Virus record (IMG/VR): IMGVR_UViG_3300027844_001828
Location: 1 to 64,000 of that record
Direction: 5' to 3' (one strand)
DNA: 64,000 nt
Numbering within the stretch: the stretch's first letter is position 1; every line of letters begins with the position of its first letter. Below are positions 4,001-47,343 of this stretch, one piece after another. The notes under the pieces were generated by a model, which saw only the letters and a list, made by a program, of their open reading frames with translations, was not told the origin of the DNA and made no database searches. A program made the translations under genes and the position numbers.

Positions 4001-4986
4001 AGGATTTAGACATGTCACAAGATGGTCTTTTTATTATAAAGAGCGATGGCGGTCTCGCCTCATTTTCTTCAGGTATATTTAGTAAGAATGACACCGCTGT
4101 TAGCAACACCCCTGTTGGCGGCATATCGACTCCAACCGTAAAGGATCTATATAGAATACCAAACTTGGTTATATCTAATATAACAAGGTGCGCGTATTCT
4201 GCTAATGGGGACATCGTAAATGTAGTGGGTTATTCAAACTTACGGGAATCTTTGAATTCGGAATTTGATATATTGGCGTTGGTATTCCATGAGGTTAGGC
4301 TTGTTGATGCTAATGAAGCTCCAATATATTTAGCCAGCGGTGGAATAGGAAGCGTATCGAACCCCTTGTTTACGTATTCCAGCCATGAGAGGGAGTATAA
4401 GAGGGTTATTGTTGAAAAACCCGCCTATGAGGAGACTATAAGTGATGCGCATCTATTTGTTGACCCAGGATTAGAATTAGGAGCCATCTCATTGGCGACA
4501 GAGGGTTCAATATCAATCATCATGTTACAGAACGGGAATACATTATCATATCTTGCAAGTGTAGATGGATCTAACTGGGCCTATTTCGATGATTTATTTC
4601 TTCTTAGCAATAGTGAAAATGTATCATCTCCATCAATACAGGTGATCAATGATTATTTGTGGATTTTCTATATGTTAAATCGAAGCGACCTTTATTTGAA
4701 GAAGGTCCCAATGAGTGACGTATTGGAGCTTTATGAGGCCACAGAAAATAATAAAAGCTCATTGGTAGCAGGAAATCCTTATCAAATTTTGAAAAGTAGT
4801 CTACAGATTAACATTGATGGATATAGCACAATCTTTGTCGCCACCATACCTAATCAACAGGTGTCTTTTGTGAAAGACGATAACGATACAATATTTTTAG
4901 CGTACAGAAACGCAAACAATCAGGCCGCAGCGATCTCTTCCCTTGACTATGGGGACACGTGGGATTTCAACCCGGTTAACTTTTAG
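1066..4986 (+). CDS. Large virion structural protein (1306 aa), beta-rich, with C-terminal Asp-box/BNR-like propeller
   Basis: Long ORF rich in S/T/D/N. It has Asp-box-like motifs (ASVDGSNW, SSLDYGDTW) and sits between the putative tape measure and hub genes. Confidence 0.55.
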   Translation: MSTTGTDLSLYTNWPPYPSYSDWELTKVNDIAGSEEHEIDADQLPASQWSIRYNPFSDEVDIGGYVPPASFLPAFARTGSIYRTIGTISSSYQSWLLTGNSTLVDISGAGGQPSYSGIIPPTLDYQFADNFKEVLHYGMEGLFSCQVTSTGAVSFISMESFFAYMEFLARCRMKPFRIERANILTSSFVEVDSNADWEFTLNTTLSNNRSDIIDTHSDNITGTIFPVDANGIVDGSTVTVSVDKIIGKEITVTMAPVANTTAEEVSAGWGASYISFNKVVFLEDPLMLYAERKADTSNIAGNDYVYESADGYETREQSVKSSGGVTGIYIAKAAMIAYIEKSLTVVTSSDLTDDLAYAQSEDLEELESASAFYVPFEGTPAEVDRAKRFLGYMSNFDTKPSTIILHVGIGGGVTRRHNMHAGCLTNDYFITQDGGESTYRISNHIRNGIYSVETNSKTSSLNLLDHLSDTNVTISDISFETHASRMWLFNDICSNNSKTSGSCDRALFWGEITTTPLNFNTTNGVAQTSFELKLGSNFWDYGDRDFLKNRFVQNVSSSNNNFIEKWDKFGNWKLNDINGTKSYDIFSVEESTVSSDSFKIKIYGTFTVADLPLNILEWWISFDEKFEIANGFGYVTAPYVAMSGVLAGDNDNQGGFTKVIFNGLYVGLPLRESAPDGDALTVVVENPGIYPNIETPPSIYFSSGKTGEYLFLGKNESSESLRLLYRRKNDQGQALVVRSGRLGFEYENNETPIYYGDAETTNSNVSVSGSAGATITIDSGNNIIDNDIIGISGKRTANSAPVAVNGSFPNIIWQLFHDGYPLGYPSTSGKRVTLYSRTVGSPPPYVEEDVTDVPLYKSGLMYSVAIKSNYDIYVTSDIQDENITDPSLIKFVPIEGVANSPIIEAPEITMVNKSNVIKNATNPFVYESDIGMDVFMFIKNQGWLQAVDGGSSFVNINNFSILRPGSHPIQGCDPTASLEDLDMSQDGLFIIKSDGGLASFSSGIFSKNDTAVSNTPVGGISTPTVKDLYRIPNLVISNITRCAYSANGDIVNVVGYSNLRESLNSEFDILALVFHEVRLVDANEAPIYLASGGIGSVSNPLFTYSSHEREYKRVIVEKPAYEETISDAHLFVDPGLELGAISLATEGSISIIMLQNGNTLSYLASVDGSNWAYFDDLFLLSNSENVSSPSIQVINDYLWIFYMLNRSDLYLKKVPMSDVLELYEATENNKSSLVAGNPYQILKSSLQINIDGYSTIFVATIPNQQVSFVKDDNDTIFLAYRNANNQAAAISSLDYGDTWDFNPVNF

Positions 4987-4993
4987 GGAAATC

Positions 4994-7771
4994 ATGGCCG
5001 CTCCAGAAAATATGGGAAGAGCATATTGCAAGGTTGTATTTTACGACTCCCTTCCAAATGTAATTAGAGACCCAGATAAGATGAGAAAGTCTGCCGAGAT
5101 GGTTCTCGGATTTGAGAGTCAAACTCTGATCAAAAGGGAGAGTTTTGGGGTTCAATTTATCGGTGTCCCACCAAGAACAGAAGGGCCACCTCTCGCTGGT
5201 GCTATAATACCCAGAATATTGTATGAGCCTGTCAATAATGAAACCTTTAATTCCTCGGCATGTGCGAACGCCCCGGTCCAATGGAATCAAATGAATCATC
5301 GTTTCGCTGGAGGCATCCCACCAATATTTAAGAGTTTAATTTTGGGCAAGACAGACGCTGACGTGACAGACGCTTCGAAACTTCCTGGATACAATAGGCA
5401 GACTTGGAGATCAAAACAAGTCCCAGTCGCAAACACAGAGTATGTTGAGTCGGAGTACATAAACACCAACATCGATTACCCGGCTGGGTTGGTGCCGGAG
5501 ATTGTACTGGTTCAGCCTGATGACAGGCCAATAAACACCAAATGTTTTGCCAGTCAGGAATATGGCGGAAAAGAAGTGTGGTGGGGGATAAAAAGTAATA
5601 ATTTCAAGGCGAAAGGGGCTCCGTTTTGGCTAACTATAAAAGCAACCAGAACATATGTAGAGCAACAAACTAATTATCCAAAAAGGTCTTACATCGCGGT
5701 CAAGTTTGCGGAATCAAGGGAGACTGTACAGTTATCAGATGGATCTACTGTGACCAGGCGTAACCCTCATATTTTGGTGATAAATGACAAGGGTGGCGTG
5801 ATGGTTAGGTATAAATATAAAGGGAATCTTATCGAAGTCTCAGTTAATCTCCCCCATTTGTCAGAGGCTTTTGAGAACAAAGATGAAACAATAAGAGTTG
5901 GTTTTTTACTTGTGGCTGGAAGACTGGTAGTTTTTGCCGATGAGCACAGGTATGATGTTATTAATGTTCATGGCCTAGATAGGGACCAGATAAGGATAGG
6001 ATTTCATCTTAATATGAGAGATGTTGAAGTGTATGGGTGGAATTGCCGAGCACTTATTAACGTATCTCCCATGACGTTTTTCAAGAGAGCGTGGTTCGTA
6101 GTTAAAAACATGTCTGGAAAAGTTTATTATGAAGGAAACAAATCTCCGCCTTCTAATAAAGGCGGATTCGCTGCCGGAACTTGGGCTCCTGGGTATTACA
6201 TTAATTGGCAAATAACTAAAGAGCAGTTTGAGGGAAATAACAGTAAGCCTATGTATGCTGCTCAATTTAACGAGTATCACGAAGTAGACTTAATTGACCC
6301 TCGTGCTAATCCAATAAGGCCACCGGTGGGGATAAACTTGCCAGGAAGGGCTTTTACAAAAGTAAATGACGCTAAGTATTGGTGGGGCAAGGTTGAGATT
6401 GTTAGATCTAAAAAGAAAGATGCAATTGTTGCAGACGATTTTTGGTTTGGTTATTTGGAAACTGAAGATATAGTCGATTCAGCAGCACCAGGCGGTGCGA
6501 TAACAACAAAAGACGCTGGGTTCCCTATAGTCTATAACTTGTTTGTTAAGCAGGACTCTGTAGAGGAGGTTCGAACTGGTCCGATTATGCCAGCGGCAGG
6601 GAGAGTTGACGTTTCTGACGATGTTATGAATGTTCATATAACTCAAGAATTAGACAATGTTAAACCAACTGCGATTATAAAGAAGGCAAAAATAACTCTT
6701 TTTGATGAAACGAATGATTATTCAAGATACTTAACAAGGGCGCGAGGTGTAAAAATTTGGTTGGAGTGGAGCACCAAGGACTCGAACCCAATTCTACTAA
6801 CAGACGATCCCATTTTTGTTGGGGTCGCTTATGGAGAATCATCGACTATTGAGCCAGGGAAAAGCACCATCTCCCTTACCTGTACAGACTATTGGGGCCT
6901 TCTTGATAAGGTTCGAGTTAAGAACTCTCCATTTTATGATGGGTTTGAAGTGGCAAGTGTTGTTGAAGACTTGGCTGATAGGGCGGGGATAAAAACCATT
7001 GATGATATAACACACACCACAGGGAACGCGAGAAGTGTCCCGTTCTATTTCTTGGGAAGTGGATTCTCATTCGATAAGCCAATGCATAGGTATGAGGGGA
7101 CAATGACAATTAAAGAGTGTATTTTCTCTGCGCTAAAGATGTTTCCATACTATGCATATTTCAATGACGTTGGAGAATTGACTATTGCCATAATACCAGG
7201 CGATTTTGACTTTTCAAAGAGACAAGCCGATTGGGACCCCTTGGTTAAGAAGTTCTATTATAGAGAATTTGGCCCCGGAGTTCCCGTTGGAAATCCAGAG
7301 AAGCTCATATTAAATAGTGTTAACATGCAATCAACATTAAGCACCAGTATTTATAATAGTTTTTTGGTCAAGGGCGTTGAGAGAACTCACAACAGGGTTA
7401 TTTTAGTCTCGAAAGGGAATCCTCATTCATTGACAAACCCGAACTATACGGGATATCTTGGTCATATTTCAGAGATTGTTATTCAAGTGCCAGCATTAGA
7501 TTCTCAAGCCGCTGTACAGTCATATGTTCAAAGAATTGCGAAGATGTATGCTAAGCCTGGGTTTGAAACGAGTATTCAGACCGTTGGGCATGTTACACCG
7601 TATAGGCCTGGGCAATTTATTAAAATAAAGGAAACAGTAGCGTCAAACATGTTAAAGTTTAGAGTTACAGAAATACAACATAAGTTCACGGCTGAAAAAA
7701 ACGAATGGTTGACAGATATAAATGCGTACCAGATCACACCTGGCGCAATAGCACTTATTAATACGCCGTAA
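4994..7771 (+). CDS. Baseplate hub / tail-associated protein (gp27/gp44/YqbQ-like C-terminal region)
   Basis: The C-terminal ~400 aa follow the hub pattern: 'ISLTCTDYWGLLDK...SPFYDG..VASVVEDLADRAGI', 'YAYFNDVGELTI', 'YRPGQFIKI...FRVTEIQHKF'. ATG 4994 is preferred over the track's TTG 4943, which overlaps the previous gene. Confidence 0.6.
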   Translation: MAAPENMGRAYCKVVFYDSLPNVIRDPDKMRKSAEMVLGFESQTLIKRESFGVQFIGVPPRTEGPPLAGAIIPRILYEPVNNETFNSSACANAPVQWNQMNHRFAGGIPPIFKSLILGKTDADVTDASKLPGYNRQTWRSKQVPVANTEYVESEYINTNIDYPAGLVPEIVLVQPDDRPINTKCFASQEYGGKEVWWGIKSNNFKAKGAPFWLTIKATRTYVEQQTNYPKRSYIAVKFAESRETVQLSDGSTVTRRNPHILVINDKGGVMVRYKYKGNLIEVSVNLPHLSEAFENKDETIRVGFLLVAGRLVVFADEHRYDVINVHGLDRDQIRIGFHLNMRDVEVYGWNCRALINVSPMTFFKRAWFVVKNMSGKVYYEGNKSPPSNKGGFAAGTWAPGYYINWQITKEQFEGNNSKPMYAAQFNEYHEVDLIDPRANPIRPPVGINLPGRAFTKVNDAKYWWGKVEIVRSKKKDAIVADDFWFGYLETEDIVDSAAPGGAITTKDAGFPIVYNLFVKQDSVEEVRTGPIMPAAGRVDVSDDVMNVHITQELDNVKPTAIIKKAKITLFDETNDYSRYLTRARGVKIWLEWSTKDSNPILLTDDPIFVGVAYGESSTIEPGKSTISLTCTDYWGLLDKVRVKNSPFYDGFEVASVVEDLADRAGIKTIDDITHTTGNARSVPFYFLGSGFSFDKPMHRYEGTMTIKECIFSALKMFPYYAYFNDVGELTIAIIPGDFDFSKRQADWDPLVKKFYYREFGPGVPVGNPEKLILNSVNMQSTLSTSIYNSFLVKGVERTHNRVILVSKGNPHSLTNPNYTGYLGHISEIVIQVPALDSQAAVQSYVQRIAKMYAKPGFETSIQTVGHVTPYRPGQFIKIKETVASNMLKFRVTEIQHKFTAEKNEWLTDINAYQITPGAIALINTP

Positions 7772-22904: not shown

Positions 22905-25900
22905 ATGATAGTTCTTTCTTCATTCCAGGTAAACACAACAGGAACATGTGACAATGAAAATGTCATATTGACATCCAGTGGAGACCCTGTTGCCTCATGG
23001 AAGCAAGATGGGGATTTGAAAGTAAGGCTCTCCAAAGACGGTCTGTGGTACACCATTGACGATGTTGGAGTGTCACCATCAAATGATGTGAAGATTGGCT
23101 TGTCAAGCAATGGGAATTATCTTCTTTTCTATCTTTCATTGACAACGTTAAGATGTCTCGAATACGATTTCACAAATTCAAACTTCAGAGCCCCAGTAAC
23201 CGTAGCGACAGGAGTTGATATTTTTGAAGCCACAAGAAACGCCCCTTCTATCACGGTTGCGTATACGCAGACGAATAAAATTTACACTGCGACGAGAGAT
23301 GAAGATAGCAAAGTCTGGAATACTGGCGCACTTGTGGTTACTGAGACGGGATCTATTACGGACCTTTCAATTGATGGTGAAACTGGGTATACGGCAATTG
23401 CGTATTCAATTGGGGATGAGATTGATGTTTATCAGTCAGTAGACTCATCCCCATTCAGTAGAATTATATCGACCGGAGTTTTGGCAAATGTAAACTTAAG
23501 GTCTGTTAGTGCGTCAAGCTTTGATCTCGTCTATACAGAGAGTCTTGGCGGCGGTAATAATTCAATAGAGCATGTCAGGCGAGACATCTATGTCGATTGG
23601 GCGACACAGATTGTTGACGCCACAAATGATAACAACAACGTGGATCTATACTCCGAGTCTCTAAAAGCCTATGTTGTTTGGGTAGAGGGCGGAAAGGTTC
23701 GATACAGAGAAAGGGCCGACGACAATTCTTGGAGCAATCTTGTCGGGTCAACTGAGATCGATACGTGTGACGCTGACAGCGAGCCTAAAATATTGTTCTA
23801 CGCCAGTTACGCAAGAGTTTTGTATAAGAAGAGCGGCGATGTTTATTATGCTGGGATGACACCAAATACCCAAAACATTGTTGGTAATTTTGGCGCTTCA
23901 TCATGGGGCGGGACAAAGCACATTGATAATAGTGCAACAGCGATAAGATCAAGTTTGGTTGAGAATAGGATTTCTCAAAGGATCATATTCACTCAGAAAG
24001 AATTGAGCATTGGTGGTGTCTCGTGCTATTTGAAAAATAAGTCGAGTGACGCGGACGTGACCTACACATTGTATATGGACATATATTATTCCGATATCAG
24101 TGCGAACCCATACTCTACACCTCTCGCAACAACGTCTATTGCCTCGTCAGCTATCCCAGATCAAGGTTGGGCCGAGTTCGATTTTAATTTGAGCGACCTT
24201 GCAATACCATTGGACGGATATTGTTTTGTAATGAGTCAGGTTGGTGGAGATGAGAATAATTACGCCTCATGGCTCTCCTTTAAGGATGGCGGAACGGGGT
24301 CAAAGGTAAGTAATGATGAAACCACATGGGATTTGGTTAATGGATTCACACGTGGAATCATGATCAAGGGTAATTTTGATCCGTATGCCAACATAATAAA
24401 TGTTGACCCCGCAAAGATAACTAATGAACTGGTTACCCCGCCTGCGGTTTTGTCAACTGTTAAGCAGATTGAATTGACCGACCTTAATGAAGGTCTCTTC
24501 GACGGGACAAAGCTCGTTAACTTTGGATCTCCAGCTTATGGTCAGGTGATTGATCAGGACGAAAGGATATCTGGATACACAGGAACGGATGAAGACTGGA
24601 GAGTCGTTCTCTCAGACAAGAATCTTATTTTATCATTTGTCGTAGATAGCTCTGGTAGCTGCGGGTGGAATGACGTTTTTGGATTGAGAAAAAGCTTGAT
24701 GAATAAGATTATCGCGAGACTAAAGACCAAAACTACCGGTCAGATACTTTTTGATTTTGTAAAATATGGTGGTATGTTAATTGATGACGTGTCAGTTAAT
24801 CTAACCAAGAAGGTTAGAGGGGTAATAGCATCAATAGATGATGTAAAATCTGTCTCAGGATTCGATTCAGATGGGAACCCTATAGACTCTACAATAAATC
24901 CCAGAGAGCATTTGAGGACAGGGGTCATTGCTTATGGATACAAGGCTCTTAAAACGGGAACCACGTATCAGGCCAGAGGCGTGAAACTTGGATGGAAAGA
25001 CATTTTCCATAGATCAGTAGAGTCGAATTGGCATGATTTTTGGAAGGTGGATTCCCCTACACTTAGCGTTGCTACGAATGGCCCTGAAAGCGAAACGGTA
25101 TTGAACATTGCTCTCACCGATTCGGCAAAGGACGCAACAAGATTTTATGCTGCGAATAGTGATGATGATTCCAGGTCTTTCCTTGAAACAGATCTCGCAT
25201 CCGGTTCATTAGACACTGAGGTTTTTGACTCTACAGGATTTGAGGCCGACAGAAGAATAAATGTTTTAGATAAGGATTCTATAAATACGTATTTCATTGT
25301 TGAGTCGGTAGATTCGGTAACGGACATCATAACAGCAGAGCAACAGTCTAATTATAGTTTGACAGCTGCCGGAGCAGTCGTAGAAACAATCAGGCCATTA
25401 TTTGTTCAATCGGGGTGGGAAGCGACAGACTCTATGGAGTTCTTCATTAAAGACGGAGAGAGTAAGGGCGCAATAATATTTTTCATCCAGTGCCTTAATG
25501 GCGCACATATGGAATGGGAAGTTACCCCGTTGGCCGAATGGTCTTCTTCCAATCTTTATTTCATAGATGAAACGGCCAAGTTCGATGTCGATGCTGTCAA
25601 CTCTCAGGGAGAGAACTTGCCAGACGGAACCCTTGTTGAGTTCTATGTTGATAAGCCACCGCCATTAGGTTCTGACGAATTAACCGCTGATGGACAAGCG
25701 TCTTCGGCGCAGGCGTCATATGATTTGTCGCAAGACGCATTAGACGGGTCTTCAGTAATCTATTTGGGCTCTACGGCTATAACGGCTCTTAGTAGGAATG
25801 ACAAGGTCGAGATAATAGATTCCAACAAAACCTATACAAGCGCACAGGGGAGTGGCGGTCCTCACTACTCATTTGTTTCAGAGATAAACGCTGATGACGG

Positions 25901-28900
25901 ATACATTATAATAACAGATTCGCTCGAAGATGATTTTTTGACAGTGGACAGTGCGAAGCTGGTTTTTCCCGCGACAGAAATAAGGGAAAACGACTTCCCG
26001 CTAAAGACGGAAATAGATATTCATGCGAATATTGTAAACGTCACCCCCACATACATTGGGAGAGAATTGGATAGCGGACTATACGACGGGCTTGATAAAA
26101 AGAGATCTGCTGTGGCGGACGGGTATGATGATCACAACGCTGACAATGAATATGTCTACAGGGACTCGGCGGAAATGCTAACGACAGATGGATATTCCGC
26201 CCTTAGAATTTTACCAGTTACGGAAGATAATTTCTTAAGCAAAGACTTGAAAGAAGCAGCCGCGAATTCAATCTTTGGGTTGACAGACCGAGAGAAAGTT
26301 AATGCGGATGCAGAACCTGGAGGTTTAGAGTCGGAAGATGAAACAGCCGTGGCCCTATCCTCGGATGATGATACGGCGAAGTACTTCGAGCCACCCGCCG
26401 ATTTTGTTATGGACCATAGAGTTAGCGTTTTCGGCGGGGAGGCAAGCACAACGATGAAGTCATTCGCCTCAGAACTCTATGCCGAAACCATCAATGGAAG
26501 AACATACCTTGCGAAGAGCTATGAGGTGTACACCGCAATGACATTTTTCAAAGAGAATGGGAATATTCTTGCACAGTCGATGCTCCCATCCTTCACTGTT
26601 AGTTTCGCCTCCCCAATAAGAATGGGGAGTGAAATAAATAAAACGACCACATACAGTTGCCCACCAACAGAGCACGGCGAAGAAGAGTCTAATCAAATTG
26701 TTTCTGGAACATTTGCGACAGATGAAGACTCTGTCGTGGTAACTTACAATATTGATGATAGGGATTTCCCATTACCGAATGGCGTTATAGAAGTTTACGT
26801 TTATGATGGGATGAGAGATGAAGACAATGCAAATGTTACTGATGACGACATCGGGGAGCCAAATGGTTGTGACGACAAATTGTCAAGCGCAGGCGGAACG
26901 CTAATTTATGTTGGTGAAAATTCGACTTACGATTCTGATATTAGTAAGTATCTACTTGCCGACTCATATCTTGACCCATTTAGTTTCGAGTCAAAACAAA
27001 CCTTAGTTGTTGACAATGGTGTTGCGACTCTGACGCTTCCAGCAATTGATAGAGTCGCTAAATTTGTTATCCATGCCGTTTATGAGATCGAAGAGGGTAA
27101 GAGGGTCGTTCATGAGCAGACTATTTACTACAGAAGCCCTCTGGTTATCGAGTACACAGGGCCAACAACACTTGTTGCGGATGGCTCTTCTGTTTACAAT
27201 TTGAGCGCCTCGTTAGAGTGGAGAGGAACTGACAACGTAGACGATGGAACAATCGTCAACTTTTCAGCAAGTGGTGGGGATTTAACCCCTTCAGTAAGTG
27301 AGACCGTAAGTAATATTGCCAGCGGTGTGGAATACCATCCAAACTTACAATACGGAGTGGAGATAGTTTCAGACGATGAAGAAGCCCAGTCTTTAAGTCA
27401 GAATTTTGCGGATAGATTGTCGGGCGAGGAATCAACAGAGTCGAGGTCTATAGTTATCACCGCAACGTATCAGGGGTTCTCAGGAAGAACAAGTGCGACG
27501 TTGAATATTAACGACACAGAAGATGGGACTGGGGATTTCTTTTTCTATTGCTCAGTAGATCCGGCAGAAATATACTCGGATGGTGAAGACCCTTCAATGG
27601 TGGTTGCTGACCTTCAGGAATCTACGAATAGAGGGTTCCCGTTCATTGAGGTGGTGGGAGAGGACCTTGTCGAGAGCAATATTGGTTGTTTGTTTAATGG
27701 GCCTGGAATAACTGTAGAGAACAGACTGGCCAGATGGACTGATGATTTACCTCCAGACGGAAGCTTCGCAACTCCGGATGACACCCCGTGGTATGCATGG
27801 AATAGGATTACGGCAAATGAATTCATTGGTAGACCAAAATACTTCCCACCAGGGAGGCCAGGGTCTCCGCCAGCTTGTAATTCGCCAGCTTGTGTTTTAC
27901 TTAATGTTTACACAAGGTCTCAGAAGTTCAATTCTTTTGGGAGAGGAATAGATAGCTTCACTGTTTCCTTCTTGTCTTCAACAATAACTGGAGTCGCAAA
28001 AATTCCAAAGCCAAGGATCGAATTGAAAGAACCCCTTGGCATAGACGTTTCATTTGAGCCAATTGATAGAACTGAATATCAGACTACGGCTTGGAGGTCC
28101 ACGCCACTTGGAACTCACCCGTCTTCTCACTATATTGATGAATACAACCATCCAATAAGAAGAGATGGGTCCGCCAAACATTATGTTGTAGCCGAAATAA
28201 CATGGAAGGACAAGTATATTGTTGGCACGGCTCAAAACCCACTTCCAAAAGTTACATTCACTTCGGGCGAACTCGACGTGAACAGTGAGAACCAGTCATA
28301 TGATGTTTCGTTCACGGAAAATGACGACTACAGTCTTGACACAACAGAAGCTCAGGTTTCTATAGCGAGAACAAGTTTTGACGAAAGTCATTATCACGTT
28401 TGCTATGTTGATGCTAATGGAAAAGGGTTGACAACGGAAACTATAGTGTTCGAAAAAGGGGTGACAGTCGCAGATCATGTGCATGCGATTGATCTTAATG
28501 CTGAAGAAGTAATATCTTACGAGGTGTTTGATAAGGTTGTTACAAATGAGAGCGGATCAGATGTCGAAGCCGCCGTTAACCATACTCACAGTCCAAGGGC
28601 GGTTGCGATAATATCTACTGGATCAACAAGCGATATTAGCCTACCCATAGCTGTTAAGGGCGAAGTCACATATGACAATGGTGTATTGCTTAATAATGGC
28701 AAGAGAGTGGTCAGGACTCTTGAGAACTACGCCTTGAGCAAGCCGGAGAAGAAAACGGATTCTGGATCTGTATTTACAGAGCAATATTTCCTTGAAATCA
28801 TTCCCCCACAACAGAAGGTTGAAGACGGATTAGTTCCTGGGATATTGACATCGACAAATAAATCTAAGCCCGGCCACACTATTGCTTATCATGCGTGGAA

Positions 28901-31184
28901 GCAGGATGATGAAGGAAATCTACTTCCCCTTCCAGATGGAACGAGGATATTGACGAGCTTCAAGTTTTATGAGCCAGAAGCCACAGAGGGGCAGACTGAC
29001 AATTCAACATCGGGCGTTATCAATGTTGAACAGTCAATAAGGCAAGACTATGCAATCATGGAAGTTAACGCAAGAATAACAGGTTTGCCGATTGATGTGA
29101 CTGCGAAGATGCAAATAATTATTCAGAGCGATACTAATTGGTTCCCATATATTAACAATCCTATATTTGACAAGCCAACAGCGGATAGTTTGTACTTAAC
29201 TCAGGCTATCGATTCATTGACAGAGTTTGGAGCAAGCCAAATGAATGACGCGCTTGCTCAAGCGGCAAGCAGATTGATAACGGCGGAAGAAACGTATGCT
29301 GGGTGGGTTAAGGCTGTCGTCCTGATATCTAATGGAAGCGAGAACACCTCTGACGTTTCTTATTCTCAAGCAGCAGCTGCGATAAACTCTATTGATGGCG
29401 ACGGGGAGGTCCCAATATTCGCAATCAAGTTAGCGGACACAGATAGCTTCGACACGGTCGTAATGCAAAAAATGTCCAAATTAACATCTGGTGAAATGTT
29501 CAAGATTGGTCAGATTGTTGGAACCGTTGACGCTACGGCTACAGCCGTGGTCAATTCCATCCTCGCGTTAGACAAGTTCAACTTGTTAAGTGGAAAATAT
29601 ACGAACACAGTGGATCTTGGGGAAGACAAGTATTATGAGACGATAAAATTCAATGTTCTTCTTGAGGCTGGAACCTCAATCAAATTCAGAGTTAGATTCA
29701 GCGTCGATAATGTAACGTTTGGGGAGTGGGTGGAGCTTGATACGGCGACATACTCAGACGCCATTGGAAATATCATCCAGACGCACTCCATAGACCTTTC
29801 AAGCATAACTGATTTTTCCAGATACATGCAATATGAAGCGACTATGTTTGGGAACGTGACTACGTTTAAGTCGCCACAGATTCAAAGCATCAACACAGAT
29901 TATTATGAGCCTGGAGAGTACGTTTTATTCTTTCAGCCAATTGAGTTGGAAGGGAACGATGAATTTATTGGAGAGATTATATTTGTCCATGAAGGAACGG
30001 TTCCCACCACATCATCAGTCAAGTATGGTTTAACACACGATATTACATCTGATTTTAATTCTGAATATTCATCAACAGAGCAGCCGTTGTTTAGTTCCGG
30101 CAGATCCGCAATAGTATTGTCGAGGGTTAACGAAAAAACAACGACTGTTGATTATAAGAATTACTATGCAATAAATGGAAGATGGAACGATTCTTATGAA
30201 GTGGATGTCTACAGGGTTTCCGAAGATCAGCCAAAGGGTATCATTGTCCCAGATGGAGACTACTCGGTAGAAAACGCTGAGGGCCTTATTACGTTTATTT
30301 CAGCGCAGCCAATATCTAATGAATTCAATCTTGTGATAAAGCTAAACCCCTATTTTAAGCCAGCTATCGAGATGAGAAACTTCAAGCCAGAATCGGTGGT
30401 CTTGGATAACGTTTCGTTTATCTACAATGTAGTTGATAAAAACGATCTTTTCCCAGCTAATGATCATCGAGATGTCACTGGGCTCGTAGAAACCGATGTG
30501 ACCCCTTTAGGATCACTACAGGGAACGTTAGATGACGGGTTTGTAGTCTCCAACGCCAACGTCGGAAGTGACCAAGACATTTCAATTGATTTCGCAGAAG
30601 TCAGGATTGACGATAACAATGTTTCGTACTTCTGGCTTTTGACAAACTCTACTGGTCCGTATGTAGTAGAGATGCTGACGAACTTGACCAAGGTTGTCAC
30701 CCATACATTTACGGACGGGCCAACATATACTCCAATATCAATGTCGTTTGATGAGGATAATTGGTATCTTGTCGAAAGGACTTCGACAGGGTTGAAAGTA
30801 CACAAGTATGATTCGTTATTTAACTTTATAGTATCCAGTGTTCACTTAGTCGGATTCTTAAAGACGGATGATAGCTTCAAGAACATCAGAAGATTTGATT
30901 CTAAATGGTATGTTACCGAAAGCGACAGGCTCCATATCTTAAATCAGTCGTTCACAAGCATTAGCGAGATTCTCCTTCCGGTTAAGACTTCAGGGCCATT
31001 TTCGGTTGATTCAGAGAACGCCTGGATTGTTTCTAGCTTGAAAGATGTGGTGTTTGGTGTTACATTATCTGGAGCCTCAGTAGGATATTATGACGCGAAT
31101 CAGGCTGTGATTCTAAATAATTTATCCAGATTGTCAGACTTATTCTATAAGGTAAAAGATCAAAAAATCATAGAACTAACGTAA
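22905..31184 (+). CDS. Giant virion adhesin-like protein (2759 aa) with an interrupted vWA domain and invasin-type Ig-like (Big_1-like) domains
   Basis: vWA start 'LILSFVVDSSGSCGWND' and later vWA end 'GASQMNDALAQA...KAVVLISNG...PIFAIKL...LTSGEMF'. Big_1-like 'TTLVADGSSVYNLSASL...DGTIVNFSASGG'. HxH module near 28386. Confidence 0.65.
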   Translation: MIVLSSFQVNTTGTCDNENVILTSSGDPVASWKQDGDLKVRLSKDGLWYTIDDVGVSPSNDVKIGLSSNGNYLLFYLSLTTLRCLEYDFTNSNFRAPVTVATGVDIFEATRNAPSITVAYTQTNKIYTATRDEDSKVWNTGALVVTETGSITDLSIDGETGYTAIAYSIGDEIDVYQSVDSSPFSRIISTGVLANVNLRSVSASSFDLVYTESLGGGNNSIEHVRRDIYVDWATQIVDATNDNNNVDLYSESLKAYVVWVEGGKVRYRERADDNSWSNLVGSTEIDTCDADSEPKILFYASYARVLYKKSGDVYYAGMTPNTQNIVGNFGASSWGGTKHIDNSATAIRSSLVENRISQRIIFTQKELSIGGVSCYLKNKSSDADVTYTLYMDIYYSDISANPYSTPLATTSIASSAIPDQGWAEFDFNLSDLAIPLDGYCFVMSQVGGDENNYASWLSFKDGGTGSKVSNDETTWDLVNGFTRGIMIKGNFDPYANIINVDPAKITNELVTPPAVLSTVKQIELTDLNEGLFDGTKLVNFGSPAYGQVIDQDERISGYTGTDEDWRVVLSDKNLILSFVVDSSGSCGWNDVFGLRKSLMNKIIARLKTKTTGQILFDFVKYGGMLIDDVSVNLTKKVRGVIASIDDVKSVSGFDSDGNPIDSTINPREHLRTGVIAYGYKALKTGTTYQARGVKLGWKDIFHRSVESNWHDFWKVDSPTLSVATNGPESETVLNIALTDSAKDATRFYAANSDDDSRSFLETDLASGSLDTEVFDSTGFEADRRINVLDKDSINTYFIVESVDSVTDIITAEQQSNYSLTAAGAVVETIRPLFVQSGWEATDSMEFFIKDGESKGAIIFFIQCLNGAHMEWEVTPLAEWSSSNLYFIDETAKFDVDAVNSQGENLPDGTLVEFYVDKPPPLGSDELTADGQASSAQASYDLSQDALDGSSVIYLGSTAITALSRNDKVEIIDSNKTYTSAQGSGGPHYSFVSEINADDGYIIITDSLEDDFLTVDSAKLVFPATEIRENDFPLKTEIDIHANIVNVTPTYIGRELDSGLYDGLDKKRSAVADGYDDHNADNEYVYRDSAEMLTTDGYSALRILPVTEDNFLSKDLKEAAANSIFGLTDREKVNADAEPGGLESEDETAVALSSDDDTAKYFEPPADFVMDHRVSVFGGEASTTMKSFASELYAETINGRTYLAKSYEVYTAMTFFKENGNILAQSMLPSFTVSFASPIRMGSEINKTTTYSCPPTEHGEEESNQIVSGTFATDEDSVVVTYNIDDRDFPLPNGVIEVYVYDGMRDEDNANVTDDDIGEPNGCDDKLSSAGGTLIYVGENSTYDSDISKYLLADSYLDPFSFESKQTLVVDNGVATLTLPAIDRVAKFVIHAVYEIEEGKRVVHEQTIYYRSPLVIEYTGPTTLVADGSSVYNLSASLEWRGTDNVDDGTIVNFSASGGDLTPSVSETVSNIASGVEYHPNLQYGVEIVSDDEEAQSLSQNFADRLSGEESTESRSIVITATYQGFSGRTSATLNINDTEDGTGDFFFYCSVDPAEIYSDGEDPSMVVADLQESTNRGFPFIEVVGEDLVESNIGCLFNGPGITVENRLARWTDDLPPDGSFATPDDTPWYAWNRITANEFIGRPKYFPPGRPGSPPACNSPACVLLNVYTRSQKFNSFGRGIDSFTVSFLSSTITGVAKIPKPRIELKEPLGIDVSFEPIDRTEYQTTAWRSTPLGTHPSSHYIDEYNHPIRRDGSAKHYVVAEITWKDKYIVGTAQNPLPKVTFTSGELDVNSENQSYDVSFTENDDYSLDTTEAQVSIARTSFDESHYHVCYVDANGKGLTTETIVFEKGVTVADHVHAIDLNAEEVISYEVFDKVVTNESGSDVEAAVNHTHSPRAVAIISTGSTSDISLPIAVKGEVTYDNGVLLNNGKRVVRTLENYALSKPEKKTDSGSVFTEQYFLEIIPPQQKVEDGLVPGILTSTNKSKPGHTIAYHAWKQDDEGNLLPLPDGTRILTSFKFYEPEATEGQTDNSTSGVINVEQSIRQDYAIMEVNARITGLPIDVTAKMQIIIQSDTNWFPYINNPIFDKPTADSLYLTQAIDSLTEFGASQMNDALAQAASRLITAEETYAGWVKAVVLISNGSENTSDVSYSQAAAAINSIDGDGEVPIFAIKLADTDSFDTVVMQKMSKLTSGEMFKIGQIVGTVDATATAVVNSILALDKFNLLSGKYTNTVDLGEDKYYETIKFNVLLEAGTSIKFRVRFSVDNVTFGEWVELDTATYSDAIGNIIQTHSIDLSSITDFSRYMQYEATMFGNVTTFKSPQIQSINTDYYEPGEYVLFFQPIELEGNDEFIGEIIFVHEGTVPTTSSVKYGLTHDITSDFNSEYSSTEQPLFSSGRSAIVLSRVNEKTTTVDYKNYYAINGRWNDSYEVDVYRVSEDQPKGIIVPDGDYSVENAEGLITFISAQPISNEFNLVIKLNPYFKPAIEMRNFKPESVVLDNVSFIYNVVDKNDLFPANDHRDVTGLVETDVTPLGSLQGTLDDGFVVSNANVGSDQDISIDFAEVRIDDNNVSYFWLLTNSTGPYVVEMLTNLTKVVTHTFTDGPTYTPISMSFDEDNWYLVERTSTGLKVHKYDSLFNFIVSSVHLVGFLKTDDSFKNIRRFDSKWYVTESDRLHILNQSFTSISEILLPVKTSGPFSVDSENAWIVSSLKDVVFGVTLSGASVGYYDANQAVILNNLSRLSDLFYKVKDQKIIELT

Positions 31185-31198
31185 AACCAGCAACTTAT

Positions 31199-32752
31199 AT
31201 GATAATAATATACGATAAAAAAAGCAGGGTGATCGTTGAGAGCCTTACCACAAACTCAGAGGGCGAGCTACCCTCTTCAGACTCTTTGTCTAAGATGTAT
31301 CCAAAAAGTTATAAGAGACTTCTTTGCTGTAACATGGAAATCCCGACAAATATAAGTGTTGTTGGAGCGACGATTGAAATAAAATCTGAGATTCCTTTCA
31401 AGATTTTCAAAGACGATTCGATAGTGTTTGAGTTGACTATAAAAGAGTTCGATCAGAAGCTCAAAAACAAGCGAGAAGAAAGAAGAAACAGCATGCTTGT
31501 AAACTTTCCGTGCGTATTCTCCAAGAAAGGAGTGAGCGGATTCACAGATCAACTTTCACGCTTGCCACAAACCTTTGATGAAATTGGGTTGTCGATGCGA
31601 GATGGTAGTTATTTTGAAAAGGGGTTGATGAAGGTTGGTTGGTGGGGAACATTCATGGATGCTGGCGGCTATGCCAACATGAATCGCGAGATAACAAGAA
31701 GGCTACACAACTATAGGATAATCCCCTATGTTAGAACTTACGCGACCGCCTGTCAGATTGACCCACCTGCTGCTGACTTATTCAGGCAATACGAAGATAT
31801 GAAACCTAAAAAGGGCGATCACCCATTTGTATATGCTTACACTCCGATGGCTCACACTTACCATGGCGGTAAGCGTGTCTTTTTTACAATGATGGAGACC
31901 TCATCTTTACACTCTGTGTTTGTAGACCATTGCAATAGGTTTAGTGATGAAGTCTGGGTCCCGTCTGAGGCTAACAAGGAGTTATTCAAATCAGAGGGTG
32001 TAAAAAAGAGAATCAGAGTTGCCCCACTTGGCATTGATGAAATCATATACTTTAAACAAAGTGTTCCGGTTAAGAAAATAAATTCCTACAAGAGTTTGTT
32101 TGGACCAAAGGTGGAAGATGGCGTGAGGGATTTTAAGTTCCTAACACTGATTCAGTGGAACTTTAGGAAAGGCTATGACGCCTTGATAAAAGCCTTCGTT
32201 AATAAGTACACGGCAAAGGATGATGTCTGCTTAGTCTTTGCCACACAATATTCATTTGACACGGTGTACAACGACTTGAAAAGACATTTACCAAGGAATA
32301 GTGATCTTCCACAGGTTGTCCTGTATAATGACATAATCCCGACAGTAGACATGCCGGGGTTCTACAAAAATTTTGATTGTTATATTCATATGTCAAGAGG
32401 TGAAGGTTTTAGCTTGACTCAAATTGAAGCAGCCGCATGTGGGTTGCCAGTAATATCTAATTGTCATTCTGGGATGACTGAGTATCTCACAAAAGAAAAC
32501 AGTTTCATGATCGACTGCAAAGAGGTTGAGAAGTGTTGCCCAGAGCTTGGTAGCGTTTGCTATTTTTACCAAGGTCAGTACTTGTGGAAAGTTGGAAAAA
32601 AACAAATTAACCAGGCTTCAGAATATATGGATTACGTTGTTAATAATTACGGTAATGCGAAGAAGAAAGCGGAAGTGTTCCATGATGACGTAATAAAAAA
32701 TTATACCTGGGAATTAACCGCAGAACGGATAGCATCATTGCTCAAGAGTTAA
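31199..32752 (+). CDS. Glycosyltransferase family 4 (GT-B) with ~140 aa N-terminal extension
   Basis: 'RKGYDALIKAF' and 'SRGEGFSLTQIEAAACGLPVISNCHSGMTEY' are the GT4 signature; 'DEVWVPSEAN...PLGID' also fits. Confidence 0.9.
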   Translation: MIIIYDKKSRVIVESLTTNSEGELPSSDSLSKMYPKSYKRLLCCNMEIPTNISVVGATIEIKSEIPFKIFKDDSIVFELTIKEFDQKLKNKREERRNSMLVNFPCVFSKKGVSGFTDQLSRLPQTFDEIGLSMRDGSYFEKGLMKVGWWGTFMDAGGYANMNREITRRLHNYRIIPYVRTYATACQIDPPAADLFRQYEDMKPKKGDHPFVYAYTPMAHTYHGGKRVFFTMMETSSLHSVFVDHCNRFSDEVWVPSEANKELFKSEGVKKRIRVAPLGIDEIIYFKQSVPVKKINSYKSLFGPKVEDGVRDFKFLTLIQWNFRKGYDALIKAFVNKYTAKDDVCLVFATQYSFDTVYNDLKRHLPRNSDLPQVVLYNDIIPTVDMPGFYKNFDCYIHMSRGEGFSLTQIEAAACGLPVISNCHSGMTEYLTKENSFMIDCKEVEKCCPELGSVCYFYQGQYLWKVGKKQINQASEYMDYVVNNYGNAKKKAEVFHDDVIKNYTWELTAERIASLLKS

Positions 32753-32754
32753 TT

Positions 32755-33396
32755 ATGATTGGACTTGGTTTAATAACTTTGAATGAAGAAGAGTATGTCG
32801 AAAGATGTATCAAGAGCGCCGAGGGGCTCTATGATGAATTAATAGTTCTTGACCACTTCTCTTCAGATAGGACGGCTGAAATATGCGCCGATCTTGGGGC
32901 GCAAGTCGTTCAGGCCAAATGGATTCACGATTTTTCACTCGCCAGGAACCAACTAAATAATTTATTTACCTCTCCATGGATATTTCAGATGGACGCTGAT
33001 GAACATCTTGAGGGGGAAAAGTTAAATTTATTGTCACATGCAGTTGAAATATCAGAAAACCAGGGTATAGTAGCATGGTCCTTGTTAAGGAAGAACCATT
33101 ATCCTGATCATGATGCAGGATCTCCGTTTTTTGCGGCTCCGTTTTACCCGGACCCGCAAGTGAGACTGTTCAAAAACCAACCTGAGATATATTGGAGTGG
33201 AGCAGTTCACGAAGGAGTTTCTCAGGCGATTACAGAAGGGAATATTGGAACAATAGGACGCCTTTCTGTTTGTCTTCACCATCACATGTTCCGAGGAAAC
33301 CAAGAAAAATACGAAGACTTAAAAGGACAATATTACAGTAACATTCAACAAGGAGTTTTCCATGAAGATGGCCACCCGACTAATAAAGTCAACTGA
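32755..33396 (+). CDS. Glycosyltransferase family 2 (GT-A; WaaE/SunS/flagellin-GT-like catalytic domain)
   Basis: 'LITLNEEEYVERCIKS...ELIVLDHFSSDRT', 'DFSLARN', DxD motif 'MDADE', 'VRLFKN...WSGAVHE'. Confidence 0.9.
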   Translation: MIGLGLITLNEEEYVERCIKSAEGLYDELIVLDHFSSDRTAEICADLGAQVVQAKWIHDFSLARNQLNNLFTSPWIFQMDADEHLEGEKLNLLSHAVEISENQGIVAWSLLRKNHYPDHDAGSPFFAAPFYPDPQVRLFKNQPEIYWSGAVHEGVSQAITEGNIGTIGRLSVCLHHHMFRGNQEKYEDLKGQYYSNIQQGVFHEDGHPTNKVN

Positions 33397-47090: not shown

Positions 47091-47343
47091 ATTCGAAGGA
47101 ATAGAAGTGATAGATGATGGCCCGGATGTTTATTCCAGGAGTAAGGACGGTAGAATCATGTTTAGATTTAATAGAATAGACGGGACGTTTGCCCTGTTCA
47201 GATCTACAAGAATCAGCGATGCAGAAAAAGAGTTCACGTTGATAATGTTTGATAAGTTGAGCAATGATATGACCGAGACGAGTAGAGAAGATGTAAAATG
47301 TGCATTAGAGTATAAACTTGAAAAGGACCTATTTTGCACATGA
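47080..47343 (+). CDS. Hypothetical protein
   Basis: GGAG SD upstream of ATG 47080; its stop overlaps the next ATG (ATGA). Confidence 0.55.
   Translation: MENRFEGIEVIDDGPDVYSRSKDGRIMFRFNRIDGTFALFRSTRISDAEKEFTLIMFDKLSNDMTETSREDVKCALEYKLEKDLFCT

What the first reader, a model, noticed from the sequence alone, without database searches (positions are those of the whole stretch)
24615..29510. A single vWA domain split by an insertion of about 1460 aa
Seen: vWA strand 1 with the MIDAS DxSxS ('FVVDSSGS', D at 24645, aa 581), helix 1 and strand 2 ('ILFDFVKYG', ending 24770) are followed by unrelated sequence. The rest of the vWA resumes at ~29160: 'PIFDKPTADSLYLTQAIDSLTEFGASQMNDAL...KAVVLISNG...PIFAIKL...VMQKMSKLTSGEMF'. 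The break falls at the beta2-beta3 hairpin. The insert (24771-29159, ~1463 aa) holds barrel repeats, several Big_1-like Ig domains and an HxH module. The distal MIDAS residues are T>S and D>N. Known: pilus adhesin vWA domains such as RrgA carry inserted arms, but much shorter ones. Inference: the chain loops out and back, so the vWA acts as a clasp, possibly a metal- or force-dependent latch that releases a long receptor-binding arm.
Basis: partly seen in the sequence, partly recalled or inferred. Interest (0 to 1): 0.72.

Follow-up and report, generated by a model that had tools for sequence, protein, structure and literature searches.

The report
Split vWA domain in phage tail giant
A 2,759-residue tail-region protein of an uncultivated 236-kb phage carries one metal-binding vWA domain whose two pieces lie about 1,455 residues apart. 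The same split runs through a large family of such proteins, and in some relatives the two pieces sit on two adjacent genes.

Summary
ORF 22905-31184 (+) has strand 1, the DxSxS motif, helix 1 and strand 2 of a vWA domain at aa 572-623. The rest of the domain, from strand 3 to helix 6, is at aa 2079-2220. About 1,455 residues lie between, in the beta2-beta3 hairpin.

- **Pfam:** the two pieces match complementary, non-overlapping parts of the VWA models.
- **Co-folding:** given as separate chains they co-fold, ipSAE 0.87 against 0.02 for the best control.
- **No spare partner:** neither piece has a second partner in the protein or the genome.
- **Family:** 81 cluster representatives carry both pieces with inserts of 1,440-2,437 aa. 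All five metal-site residues are almost invariant.
- **Gene fission:** in five lineages the gene is cut inside the insert, so the two pieces lie on adjacent ORFs and still keep their metal-site residues.
- **Unsplit relatives:** three distant relatives appear to carry a contiguous vWA; one checked at the same genomic position.

I read the vWA as a permanent junction that is complete only when both pieces meet. It is a new variant of a known kind. No paper or isolate phage with it was found.

The parts
22905..31184 (+). Gene for the 2,759-aa giant protein (P0001). It is the last of six consecutive giant ORFs in the presumed tail module.
   Evidence: ORF list and translation. It has 12 full-length homologues at 24-48% identity.
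22905..24617 (+). Variable N-terminal region, aa 1-571, ahead of the vWA N-piece. It is shorter or absent in many relatives, where the N-piece starts at about aa 50-250.
   Evidence: Positions of the N-piece in relatives. A BNR/GH43-like propeller is only a weak Atlas lead (0.77).
24618..24773 (+). vWA N-piece, aa 572-623: strand 1 (574-581), MIDAS D581-x-S583-x-S585 (24645-24659), helix 1 (594-609), strand 2 (614-621).
   Evidence: Pfam VWA_2 profile 3-44. AF2 secondary structure. D/S/S kept in 79-80 of 81 relatives. These residues form the interface in the co-fold.
24774..29138 (+). Insert in the beta2-beta3 hairpin, aa 624-2078, about 1,455 aa of mostly beta-rich domains.
   Evidence: Insert length is 1,440-2,437 aa in 81 relatives. 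AF2 of aa 481-1201 gives confident beta domains after strand 2. Foldseek gives local matches to tailspike N-terminal domains and to host specificity / tip attachment protein J. An Ig/invasin-like lead covers aa 1400-2077.
28389..28589 (+). Three HxH motifs inside the insert (H1829/H1831, H1858/H1860, H1893/H1895). They are the only HxH motifs in the protein.
   Evidence: Invariant in the 13-sequence alignment. Three HxH at the same place in 69 of 100 relatives. A role in metal binding is inference only.
29139..29564 (+). vWA C-piece, aa 2079-2220: strand 3 (W2079-F-P motif), helices 2-3, S2111 at the MIDAS Thr position (29235-29237), strand 4 ending in S2142-N2143 (N at the MIDAS Asp position, 29331-29333), then helix 4, strand 5, helix 5, strand 6 and helix 6.
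   Evidence: Homologues match PF00092 profile 60-164. AF2 of aa 2040-2759 shows helices 2-6 and strands 4-6, but no strand 1, helix 1 or strand 2 of its own, at pLDDT 55-70. Co-fold interface. Residue conservation.
29589..30434 (+). Beta-sandwich module after the vWA, aa 2229-2510. It is conserved with the vWA across the whole family, including the unsplit relatives.
   Evidence: AF2 strands. Most of the 331 hits cover profile positions up to about 480. The unsplit relative P0148 aligns at aa 883-1160.
30516..31181 (+). C-terminal beta-propeller, aa 2538-2759. Only the closest relatives have it.
   Evidence: AF2 pLDDT about 90. Foldseek matches glutaminyl cyclase and NHL propellers, E 1e-8, TM by target 0.6. 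Only the top hits cover profile positions 499-712.
4943..7771 (+). Upstream ORF with weak matches to tail protein and baseplate hub families. It is the only direct evidence that this is a tail module.
   Evidence: phrog_1887 tail protein, E 1.6e-6; phrog_196 baseplate hub, E 8.6e-4.
31199..33396 (+). Two glycosyltransferase genes directly downstream. The order 'giant protein, then glycosyltransferases' recurs in relatives.
   Evidence: phrog_2170 and phrog_13126. Same order in L002, L004, L008, L009 and L012.

Best explanation
The gene encodes a giant tail-region protein, probably for host recognition, of an uncultivated 236-kb phage. One vWA (Rossmann-like, MIDAS-bearing) domain serves as its junction.

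The chain makes strand 1, the DxSxS loop, helix 1 and strand 2. It then leaves the fold at the beta2-beta3 turn and builds about 1,455 residues of beta-rich fibre or adhesin-type domains. It returns to add strand 3 and the remaining two thirds of the vWA, then continues into beta-sandwich modules and a terminal beta-propeller.

The vWA core and its metal site can exist only when both pieces are together. DxSxS comes from the N-piece, and the Ser and Asp/Asn come from the C-piece. The domain therefore closes the base of the giant loop in this protein. In relatives where the gene is cut inside the insert, it would join two separate polypeptides.

Shown here: the split, its position, complementarity at the profile level, predicted co-folding, family-wide conservation, the fissions and three relatives that appear unsplit. 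Inferred: that the joint is permanent; that the insert emerges on the MIDAS face (from standard vWA topology); that the site binds a divalent cation and perhaps an acidic ligand; and that the protein is a virion tail component.
For: - **Complementary Pfam coverage:** N-piece on VWA_2 profile 3-44; C-piece on VWA profile 60-164, above the gathering cut-off in P0008 and P0009. 8 of 13 C-pieces and 7 of 13 N-pieces hit VWA families, and nothing else recurs.
- **PDB profile searches:** the N-piece profile finds strand 1/helix 1 of collagen VI, PTMP1 and factor B vWA domains. The C-piece profile finds the later part of the alpha2delta-1 and VWF A3 vWA domains. All are weak, E 0.03-1.
- **Co-fold of the pieces as separate chains:** ipSAE 0.87 in three runs; the best of 3 controls scored 0.02. 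The tool's mark was reached by 58 of 80 solved complexes and 2 of 110 mismatched pairs, and holds only roughly here because my own alignments were used. N-piece residues 572-587, 593-603 and 613-626 touch C-piece 2077-2093, 2101-2113 and 2133-2145, as the 3-2-1-4 strand order requires.
- **Pieces alone:** AF2 of the C-terminal part lacks strand 1, helix 1 and strand 2, and is only moderately confident there. AF2 of the N-terminal part gives beta-alpha-beta and then unrelated beta domains.
- **One copy each:** each piece occurs once in the 236-kb genome.
- **Family:** 331 hits at E <= 1e-3. 81 representatives carry both pieces, with inserts of 1,440-2,437 aa.
- **MIDAS conservation:** D 80/81, S 79/81, S 79/81, S 123/125, D 123/125.
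- **Gene fissions:** L002/L003, L004, L008, L009/L010 and L011 have the N-piece in the upstream ORF and the C-piece in the downstream ORF. The cut sites differ. Four junctions are out of frame with ATGA/TAATG-type overlaps, and two recur in independent samples. MIDAS residues are kept on both polypeptides.
- **Unsplit relatives:** P0148, and more weakly P0156 and P0145, have a contiguous vWA followed by the same downstream module. For P0148 the same neighbourhood was checked.
Against: - The window protein itself does not reach any Pfam VWA cut-off.
- The co-fold is a prediction built with my own 13-row alignments. No coordinates were returned, so I could not confirm the fold by structure search or inspect the metal-site geometry.
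- The vWA identity of the unsplit relatives rests on weak matches: VWA_2 at 21 bits, below the cut-off; PDB E 0.04. The equivalence of their 'FPGV' motif with 'WFP' here is by eye.
- The tail location rests on one weak PHROG match upstream and on local fold matches. No sheath, Baseplate_J or gp25 was found in the genome.
- One fission (L008) is a single in-frame TAA. It could be a nonsense mutation, a read-through site or an error.
- This protein has Asn instead of the last MIDAS Asp, so its own metal affinity may differ.
Confidence: 0.82

Rival explanations
1. Swapped complementation between subunits. In an oligomeric (for example trimeric) fibre, the N-piece of one chain completes the C-piece of a neighbouring chain. 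The vWA domains would then interlock the subunits rather than close a loop within one chain.
For: In the fission lineages complementation would have to occur between different polypeptides. The linker of about 1,455 aa imposes no geometric limit. Three conserved HxH motifs resemble, from my own knowledge, the metal-binding HxH of trimeric phage fibres such as the T4 gp37 tip. That hints at an oligomer.
Against: Nothing here measures oligomeric state. The co-fold cannot tell in-chain pairing from between-chain pairing. The HxH parallel was recalled from memory and not tested.
Confidence: 0.2
2. Releasable latch. The assembled vWA opens on metal loss or mechanical load and frees the inserted arm during infection.
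For: The metal site is built from both pieces and is strongly conserved. Other vWA and integrin I domains couple the MIDAS to conformational change (general knowledge; review PMC7893114).
Against: The interface between the pieces is the core of the sheet, with strand 1 between strands 2 and 4. Separation would mean unfolding. In the fission lineages the same interface, inferred from the single-chain model, would have to hold two proteins together. This protein tolerates Asn at a MIDAS position. No tool result bears on dynamics.
Confidence: 0.06
3. No split domain. The N-terminal DxSxS stretch is a chance look-alike or part of another fold, and the C-piece is a degenerate partial vWA.
For: The window protein's own Pfam matches are not significant. 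Single-profile PDB matches are weak.
Against: The profile coverage is complementary. The co-fold scored 0.87 against 0.02. All five MIDAS residues are nearly invariant across pieces that lie more than 1,400 aa apart or on different ORFs. Unsplit relatives exist.
Confidence: 0.03

Closest known systems
vWA / integrin I-type domains with a MIDAS (Pfam PF00092, PF13519)
   Same: The order of secondary-structure elements is the same. The DxSxS motif, a hydroxyl residue and an Asp position lie at the expected places. Homologues match the Pfam models.
   Different: The domain is interrupted by 1,440-2,437 residues between strands 2 and 3. The family has Ser where most vWA domains have Thr, and this protein has Asn for the last Asp. 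The window protein is below Pfam's cut-offs.
Pilus-tip adhesins RrgA and GBS104: vWA domain with two inserted arms
   Same: A MIDAS-bearing vWA on a surface adhesin carries extra structure inserted into the fold, extending from the domain next to the metal site (review PMC7893114).
   Different: Those arms are beta-hairpins, short helices and loops, not more than 1,400 residues of independent domains. They belong to sortase-assembled pili of Gram-positive bacteria, not to phage proteins. No sequence relationship was found, and whether the insertion sites coincide was not tested.
Integrin beta-subunit I-like domain with its specificity-determining loop
   Same: From my own knowledge, not tested here: that loop is also an insertion between strands 2 and 3 (B and C) on the MIDAS face, and the beta I domain is itself part of a nested insertion architecture.
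   Different: That insertion is tens of residues long and is not made of independent domains. It is eukaryotic, and no gene fission is known to me.
Phage host-recognition proteins (tailspike N-terminal domains, lambda J-type tip attachment / host specificity proteins)
   Same: Parts of the insert give local fold matches to these proteins. The Atlas gives weak leads to Phage-tail_3 and Rcc01698_C. The gene lies next to a weak tail/hub match.
   Different: There is no global match (TM about 0.1) and no Pfam or PHROG hit for the protein. No isolate phage in the INPHARED collection encodes a relative.

Membership tests
vWA domain (Pfam PF00092 / PF13519, MIDAS-type) | Sequence match to the family model above the curated cut-off | tested here: inconclusive
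   The window protein scores 13.1 bits against a cut-off of 27 and covers only profile positions 3-44. PF00092 finds nothing in it. Homologues pass: P0008 27.9 and P0009 24.0 bits against 23.8. 8 of 13 C-pieces and 7 of 13 N-pieces match at E <= 0.1.
vWA domain (Pfam PF00092 / PF13519, MIDAS-type) | Alternating beta/alpha fold with elements in the order b1-a1-b2-b3-a2-a3-b4-a4-b5-a5-b6-a6 | tested here: met
   The N-piece is predicted as b1-a1-b2. The C-piece has helices 2-6 and strands 4-6. In the co-fold, b2 contacts the WFP (b3) segment and b1 contacts b4. These are predictions, and no coordinates were available for a fold search.
vWA domain (Pfam PF00092 / PF13519, MIDAS-type) | MIDAS residues DxSxS ... 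T ... D | tested here: met
   In the family: D 80/81, S 79/81, S 79/81; Ser at the Thr position 123/125; D 123/125. The window protein has D581, S583, S585, S2111 and N2143, so four of five are canonical in kind and the last is Asn. Metal binding itself was not tested.
vWA domain (Pfam PF00092 / PF13519, MIDAS-type) | The two pieces belong to one domain; neither has another partner | tested here: met
   Co-fold 0.87 against a best control of 0.02. Each piece occurs once in the genome. There is no nearby b1/a1/b2 for the C-piece.
Adhesin vWA with inserted arms (RrgA / GBS104 type) | Sortase-pilus tip adhesin whose vWA domain sits among IgG-like domains and carries two short inserted arms | tested here: not met
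   This is a phage gene in a 236-kb virus record. It has one insert of about 1,455 aa. No sequence match to pilus adhesins appeared in the PDB searches. The resemblance is one of principle only.
Phage tail fibre / host specificity protein | Virion tail location and recognisable fibre, tailspike or J-type domains | tested here: inconclusive
   There are only local fold matches, weak Atlas leads and one weak tail/hub PHROG match three genes upstream. The protein has no PHROG hit. No sheath, Baseplate_J or gp25 was found. Virion proteomics cannot be done with these tools.
Intein or other self-excising insert | Hint / splicing motifs at the insert ends | tested here: not met
   Pfam finds no intein or Hint domain in the protein. 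The insert is conserved as folded beta domains.

The most novel reading that the evidence does not exclude
The two vWA pieces form a natural self-complementing assembly module, a split domain whose metal site exists only after assembly. Jumbo phages would use it either to close a loop of 1,400-2,400 residues or, after gene fission, to dock two separately made giant tail proteins. The beta2-beta3 turn would serve as an exchangeable socket for host-recognition cargo. If so, it would be a new way of assembling phage host-recognition proteins and a ready-made, metal-reporting split tag for protein engineering.
Probability: 0.4. Interest if true: 0.72.

Novelty: new variant of a known kind. Interest (0 to 1): 0.62.

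Why it matters
Discontinuous domains are common, but I know of no other case where about 200 residues of fold enclose 1,440-2,437 residues of cargo. Here the pattern is no oddity of one gene. It defines a family with hundreds of members in uncultivated large phages.

The repeated gene fissions imply that the two vWA pieces find each other as separate polypeptides. That makes a concrete and cheap experiment possible: co-express the two pieces with and without metal. It also suggests how very large phage tail proteins may be assembled and how their recognition modules are exchanged.

Annotation pipelines miss the domain because neither piece alone passes Pfam's cut-offs. The case therefore also shows a blind spot of domain-by-domain annotation.

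Tried and rejected
The structure tools take only unaltered sequences, so I folded the pieces as two chains instead.
- **Isolate phages.** tblastn of the whole protein and of the unsplit relative against the phage genome collection found nothing.
- **Other collections.** Pattern scans of genome contigs and viral contigs with the C-terminal profile found no relatives. I could therefore infer neither host nor environment.
- **PHROGs.** There is no hit for the protein or for the other giant ORFs, except weak tail/hub hits for 4943-7771.
- **Myovirus baseplate and sheath families.** Searches of the whole genome for PF04865, PF04984 and PF04965 were negative. PHROG scans of ORFs at the far end of the genome returned replication genes or unknowns, not structural genes.
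- **Fold searches.** Both AF2 models gave only propeller matches (C-terminus) and local tailspike/J-type matches. None covered the vWA pieces themselves.
- **Atlas searches.** Three parts of the protein gave leads below the reliable range.
- **Are the inserts of the two main subgroups homologous?** A profile of this subgroup's insert finds only marginal matches in one Kelch/laminin-G subgroup protein (the upstream ORF of L004). One ancient insertion versus repeated insertions at the same loop stays open.
- **Aligning the whole C-piece profile to the unsplit relatives.** Only the last helix and the downstream module aligned. The equivalence of the strand-3 motif is by eye.
- **Literature.** Searches for split, interrupted or discontinuous vWA domains and for vWA in phage tails found nothing relevant.
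- **Rejected readings:** an intein, because there are no Hint motifs; and chance similarity (see the rival explanations).
Full report
**Context.** The window is the first 64 kb of a 235,624-bp virus record that CheckV rates about 93% complete. Almost all genes lie on the + strand. The finding lies inside one ORF, 22905-31184 (+), 2,759 aa. This is the last of six consecutive giant ORFs, 1066-31184. None of the six has a Pfam hit. Only 4943-7771 gives weak PHROG matches: tail protein, E 1.6e-6, and baseplate hub, E 8.6e-4. Downstream come two glycosyltransferases, a metallophosphoesterase-like protein and then replication genes. The whole genome gave no match to Baseplate_J, sheath or gp25 models. 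'Tail module' is therefore a reasonable but weakly supported label.

**Checking the observation.**
- On its own the window protein gives only a sub-threshold VWA_2 match, aa 578-615 on profile positions 3-44.
- Twelve full-length homologues at 24-48% identity exist, and they settle the identity of the pieces. P0008 and P0009 pass Pfam's cut-off for PF00092 with their C-pieces on profile positions 60-164. P0013 matches VWA_2 positions 3-35 with its N-piece.
- Scanning the excised pieces one by one, 8 of 13 C-pieces and 7 of 13 N-pieces hit VWA families, and nothing else recurs.
- Profile searches of the PDB are weak but point the same way. The N-piece finds strand 1 and helix 1 of collagen VI, PTMP1 and factor B vWA domains. 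The C-piece finds the later part of the vWA domains of calcium-channel alpha2delta-1 and VWF A3.

I gave the two pieces as separate chains with their alignments: aa 560-650 and aa 2052-2246.
- They co-fold with ipSAE 0.86-0.88 in three runs. The best of three controls scored 0.02. The tool's mark was reached by 58 of 80 solved complexes and 2 of 110 mismatched pairs, and it holds only roughly here because my own alignments were used.
- The confident contacts are those a vWA sheet requires. Strand 1 with the DxSxS loop (572-587), helix 1 (593-603) and strand 2 (613-626) touch aa 2077-2093 (the WFP/strand 3 segment), 2101-2113, and 2133-2145 (strand 4).
- AF2 of aa 2040-2759 alone shows helices 2-6 and strands 4-6 at only pLDDT 55-70. 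It shows no strand 1, helix 1 or strand 2 of its own.
- AF2 of aa 481-1201 shows beta-alpha-beta for the N-piece and then confident, unrelated beta domains.
- HMMs of each piece find exactly one copy in the whole genome.

**The family.** A profile of aa 2040-2759 found 331 proteins at E <= 1e-3 among 1.84 billion cluster representatives. With my HMMs of the two pieces, 81 representatives carry both pieces in one chain. Their inserts measure 1,440-2,437 aa, median 1,542.
- One subgroup of about 2,900-3,750 aa has the N-piece near its N-terminus. Its insert is 2,000-2,400 aa and contains laminin-G and Kelch-propeller domains.
- This subgroup's insert is barely, if at all, alignable to the insert of the window's subgroup.
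- What is constant is the vWA, in two pieces, and the beta-sandwich module of about 290 aa after it. The N-terminal region, the cargo and the C-terminal propeller all vary.
- The five metal-site residues are almost invariant: D 80/81, S 79/81, S 79/81, Ser at the Thr position 123/125, D 123/125.
- So 'T>S' is a family trait, and 'D>N' (N2143) is peculiar to this protein.

**Gene fissions.** Forty-nine representatives have only the C-piece. Many fall into tight length classes. I fetched contigs for five of them.
- In every case the ORF directly upstream carries the N-piece and the queried ORF carries the C-piece.
- The cut lies at a different place in the insert in each lineage. The C-piece starts at aa 201, 336, 544, 742 and 1104 of the downstream protein.
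- Four junctions are out of frame with the overlaps typical of coupled genes.
- Two were seen with the same boundary in independent samples (L002/L003 and L009/L010).
- L008 is a single in-frame TAA and could be a nonsense mutation or read-through.
- Both polypeptides keep their metal-site residues.

Selection thus maintains both pieces when they are no longer covalently linked. That makes sense only if they still assemble.

**Unsplit relatives.** The most distant hits, P0148, P0156 and P0145, have the N-piece motif and the end of the vWA only about 170-180 aa apart.
- P0148 reads as a contiguous vWA, with DCSGSM, then a Thr, then TDGQDS. About 20 residues link strand 2 to an FPGV motif that I equate by eye with WFP here. 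The same downstream module follows.
- P0148 sits at the same place in its genome, after giant ORFs and before glycosyltransferases.
- Its vWA identity rests on weak matches.
- The likely history is a contiguous vWA, then insertion at the beta2-beta3 turn, then repeated fission inside the insert. This order is inferred, not tested with a rooted tree.

**What the insert and flanks are.** Foldseek gives only local matches for aa 481-1201. One is a domain of about 80 residues like the N-terminal domain of several tailspikes. Others are to proteins named host specificity or tip attachment protein J. Atlas look-alikes are leads only: Phage-tail_3/Rcc01698_C for aa 624-1400, Ig/invasin-like for aa 1400-2077, and BNR/GH43-like for aa 1-560. 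The C-terminus is a confident beta-propeller. Three HxH motifs at 1829-1895 are the only ones in the protein, and 69 of 100 relatives keep them. From memory they resemble the metal-binding HxH of trimeric phage fibres. This was not tested.

**How it most likely works.** In a standard vWA the N- and C-termini lie at one end of the domain. The MIDAS and the beta2-beta3 turn lie at the other end (established topology; inference here). The domain would then be a four-way junction. The variable N-terminal region and the C-terminal sandwich and propeller modules leave from one face. Both ends of the cargo leave from the metal face.

Strand 1 is the central strand of the sheet, so the domain cannot fold without both pieces, and the metal site needs residues from both. 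I therefore read the vWA as a permanent joint that closes the cargo loop or, after fission, joins two proteins. Its conserved MIDAS is available for a cation and possibly an acidic ligand from a partner or from the host surface. A swapped arrangement between subunits of an oligomer is a live alternative. A releasable latch is unlikely, for the reasons given under the rival explanations.

**Comparison with known systems and novelty.** The domain meets the vWA criteria by fold order, motif and homologue scores, although this copy is below Pfam's cut-offs. RrgA and GBS104 show the same principle with short arms (PMC7893114). Integrin beta I-like domains use the same loop for a short insertion (my own knowledge). 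I found no paper on a split or interrupted vWA domain or on a vWA in phage tail proteins. No isolate phage encodes a relative. I rate it a new variant of a known kind. The variant is extreme in size, defines a large family and comes with natural two-polypeptide forms.

**Limits.**
- All structural statements are predictions.
- No coordinates of the co-fold were available.
- Oligomeric state, metal binding and virion location were not tested.
- Host and environment are unknown.

Noticed in passing
window 31199-33396; also L002 10662-13232, L004 13147-15736, L008 13274-14851, L009 11307-12233, L012 13718-19864: Glycosyltransferase genes directly follow the vWA-bearing giant gene in the window and in every relative's contig I looked at, including the unsplit relative. 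This may mean glycosylation of the virion protein or modification of the host surface. It is unexplained.
   Followed up: partly
window 28389-28589 (aa 1829-1895): Three HxH motifs about 30 aa apart are the only HxH in the 2,759-aa protein. They are invariant in close homologues and present as a triplet in 69 of 100 relatives. They may form a metal site in an oligomeric fibre segment.
   Followed up: partly
window 29331-29333 (N2143): This protein has Asn where 123 of 125 relatives have the last MIDAS Asp. The only other exception is a truncated sequence that may be misaligned.
   Followed up: yes
window 1066-31184: Six consecutive giant ORFs (1306, 942, 1396, 1183, 2334 and 2759 aa) lie on one strand with almost no database matches. 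Relatives' contigs carry even larger neighbours, for example a 6,290-aa ORF in L012.
   Followed up: partly
L008 7977-8003: In this relative the two halves of the giant gene are separated by a single in-frame TAA and 21 nt. This differs from the out-of-frame overlaps in the other four fissions. It could be a nonsense mutation, read-through or a sequencing error.
   Followed up: no
L008 19767-20713; L009 19165-19291 and 18653-19150: Relatives' contigs carry intein/Hint signatures in a ResIII helicase gene, and faintly in an AAA gene. One contig encodes a translation initiation factor IF3 homologue.
   Followed up: no
window 47334-49535 and 53045-54700: The phage encodes an FtsH-like ATP-dependent protease (phrog_4871, E 1.9e-141). 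It also encodes a protein whose tblastn matches lie under genes annotated DNA topoisomerase I (topA), 36% identical to Microcystis phage MaAM05.
   Followed up: no
window 30516-31181 (aa 2538-2759): A confident C-terminal beta-propeller (glutaminyl cyclase/NHL-like by Foldseek) occurs only in the closest relatives. It is a plausible exchangeable receptor-binding tip.
   Followed up: partly
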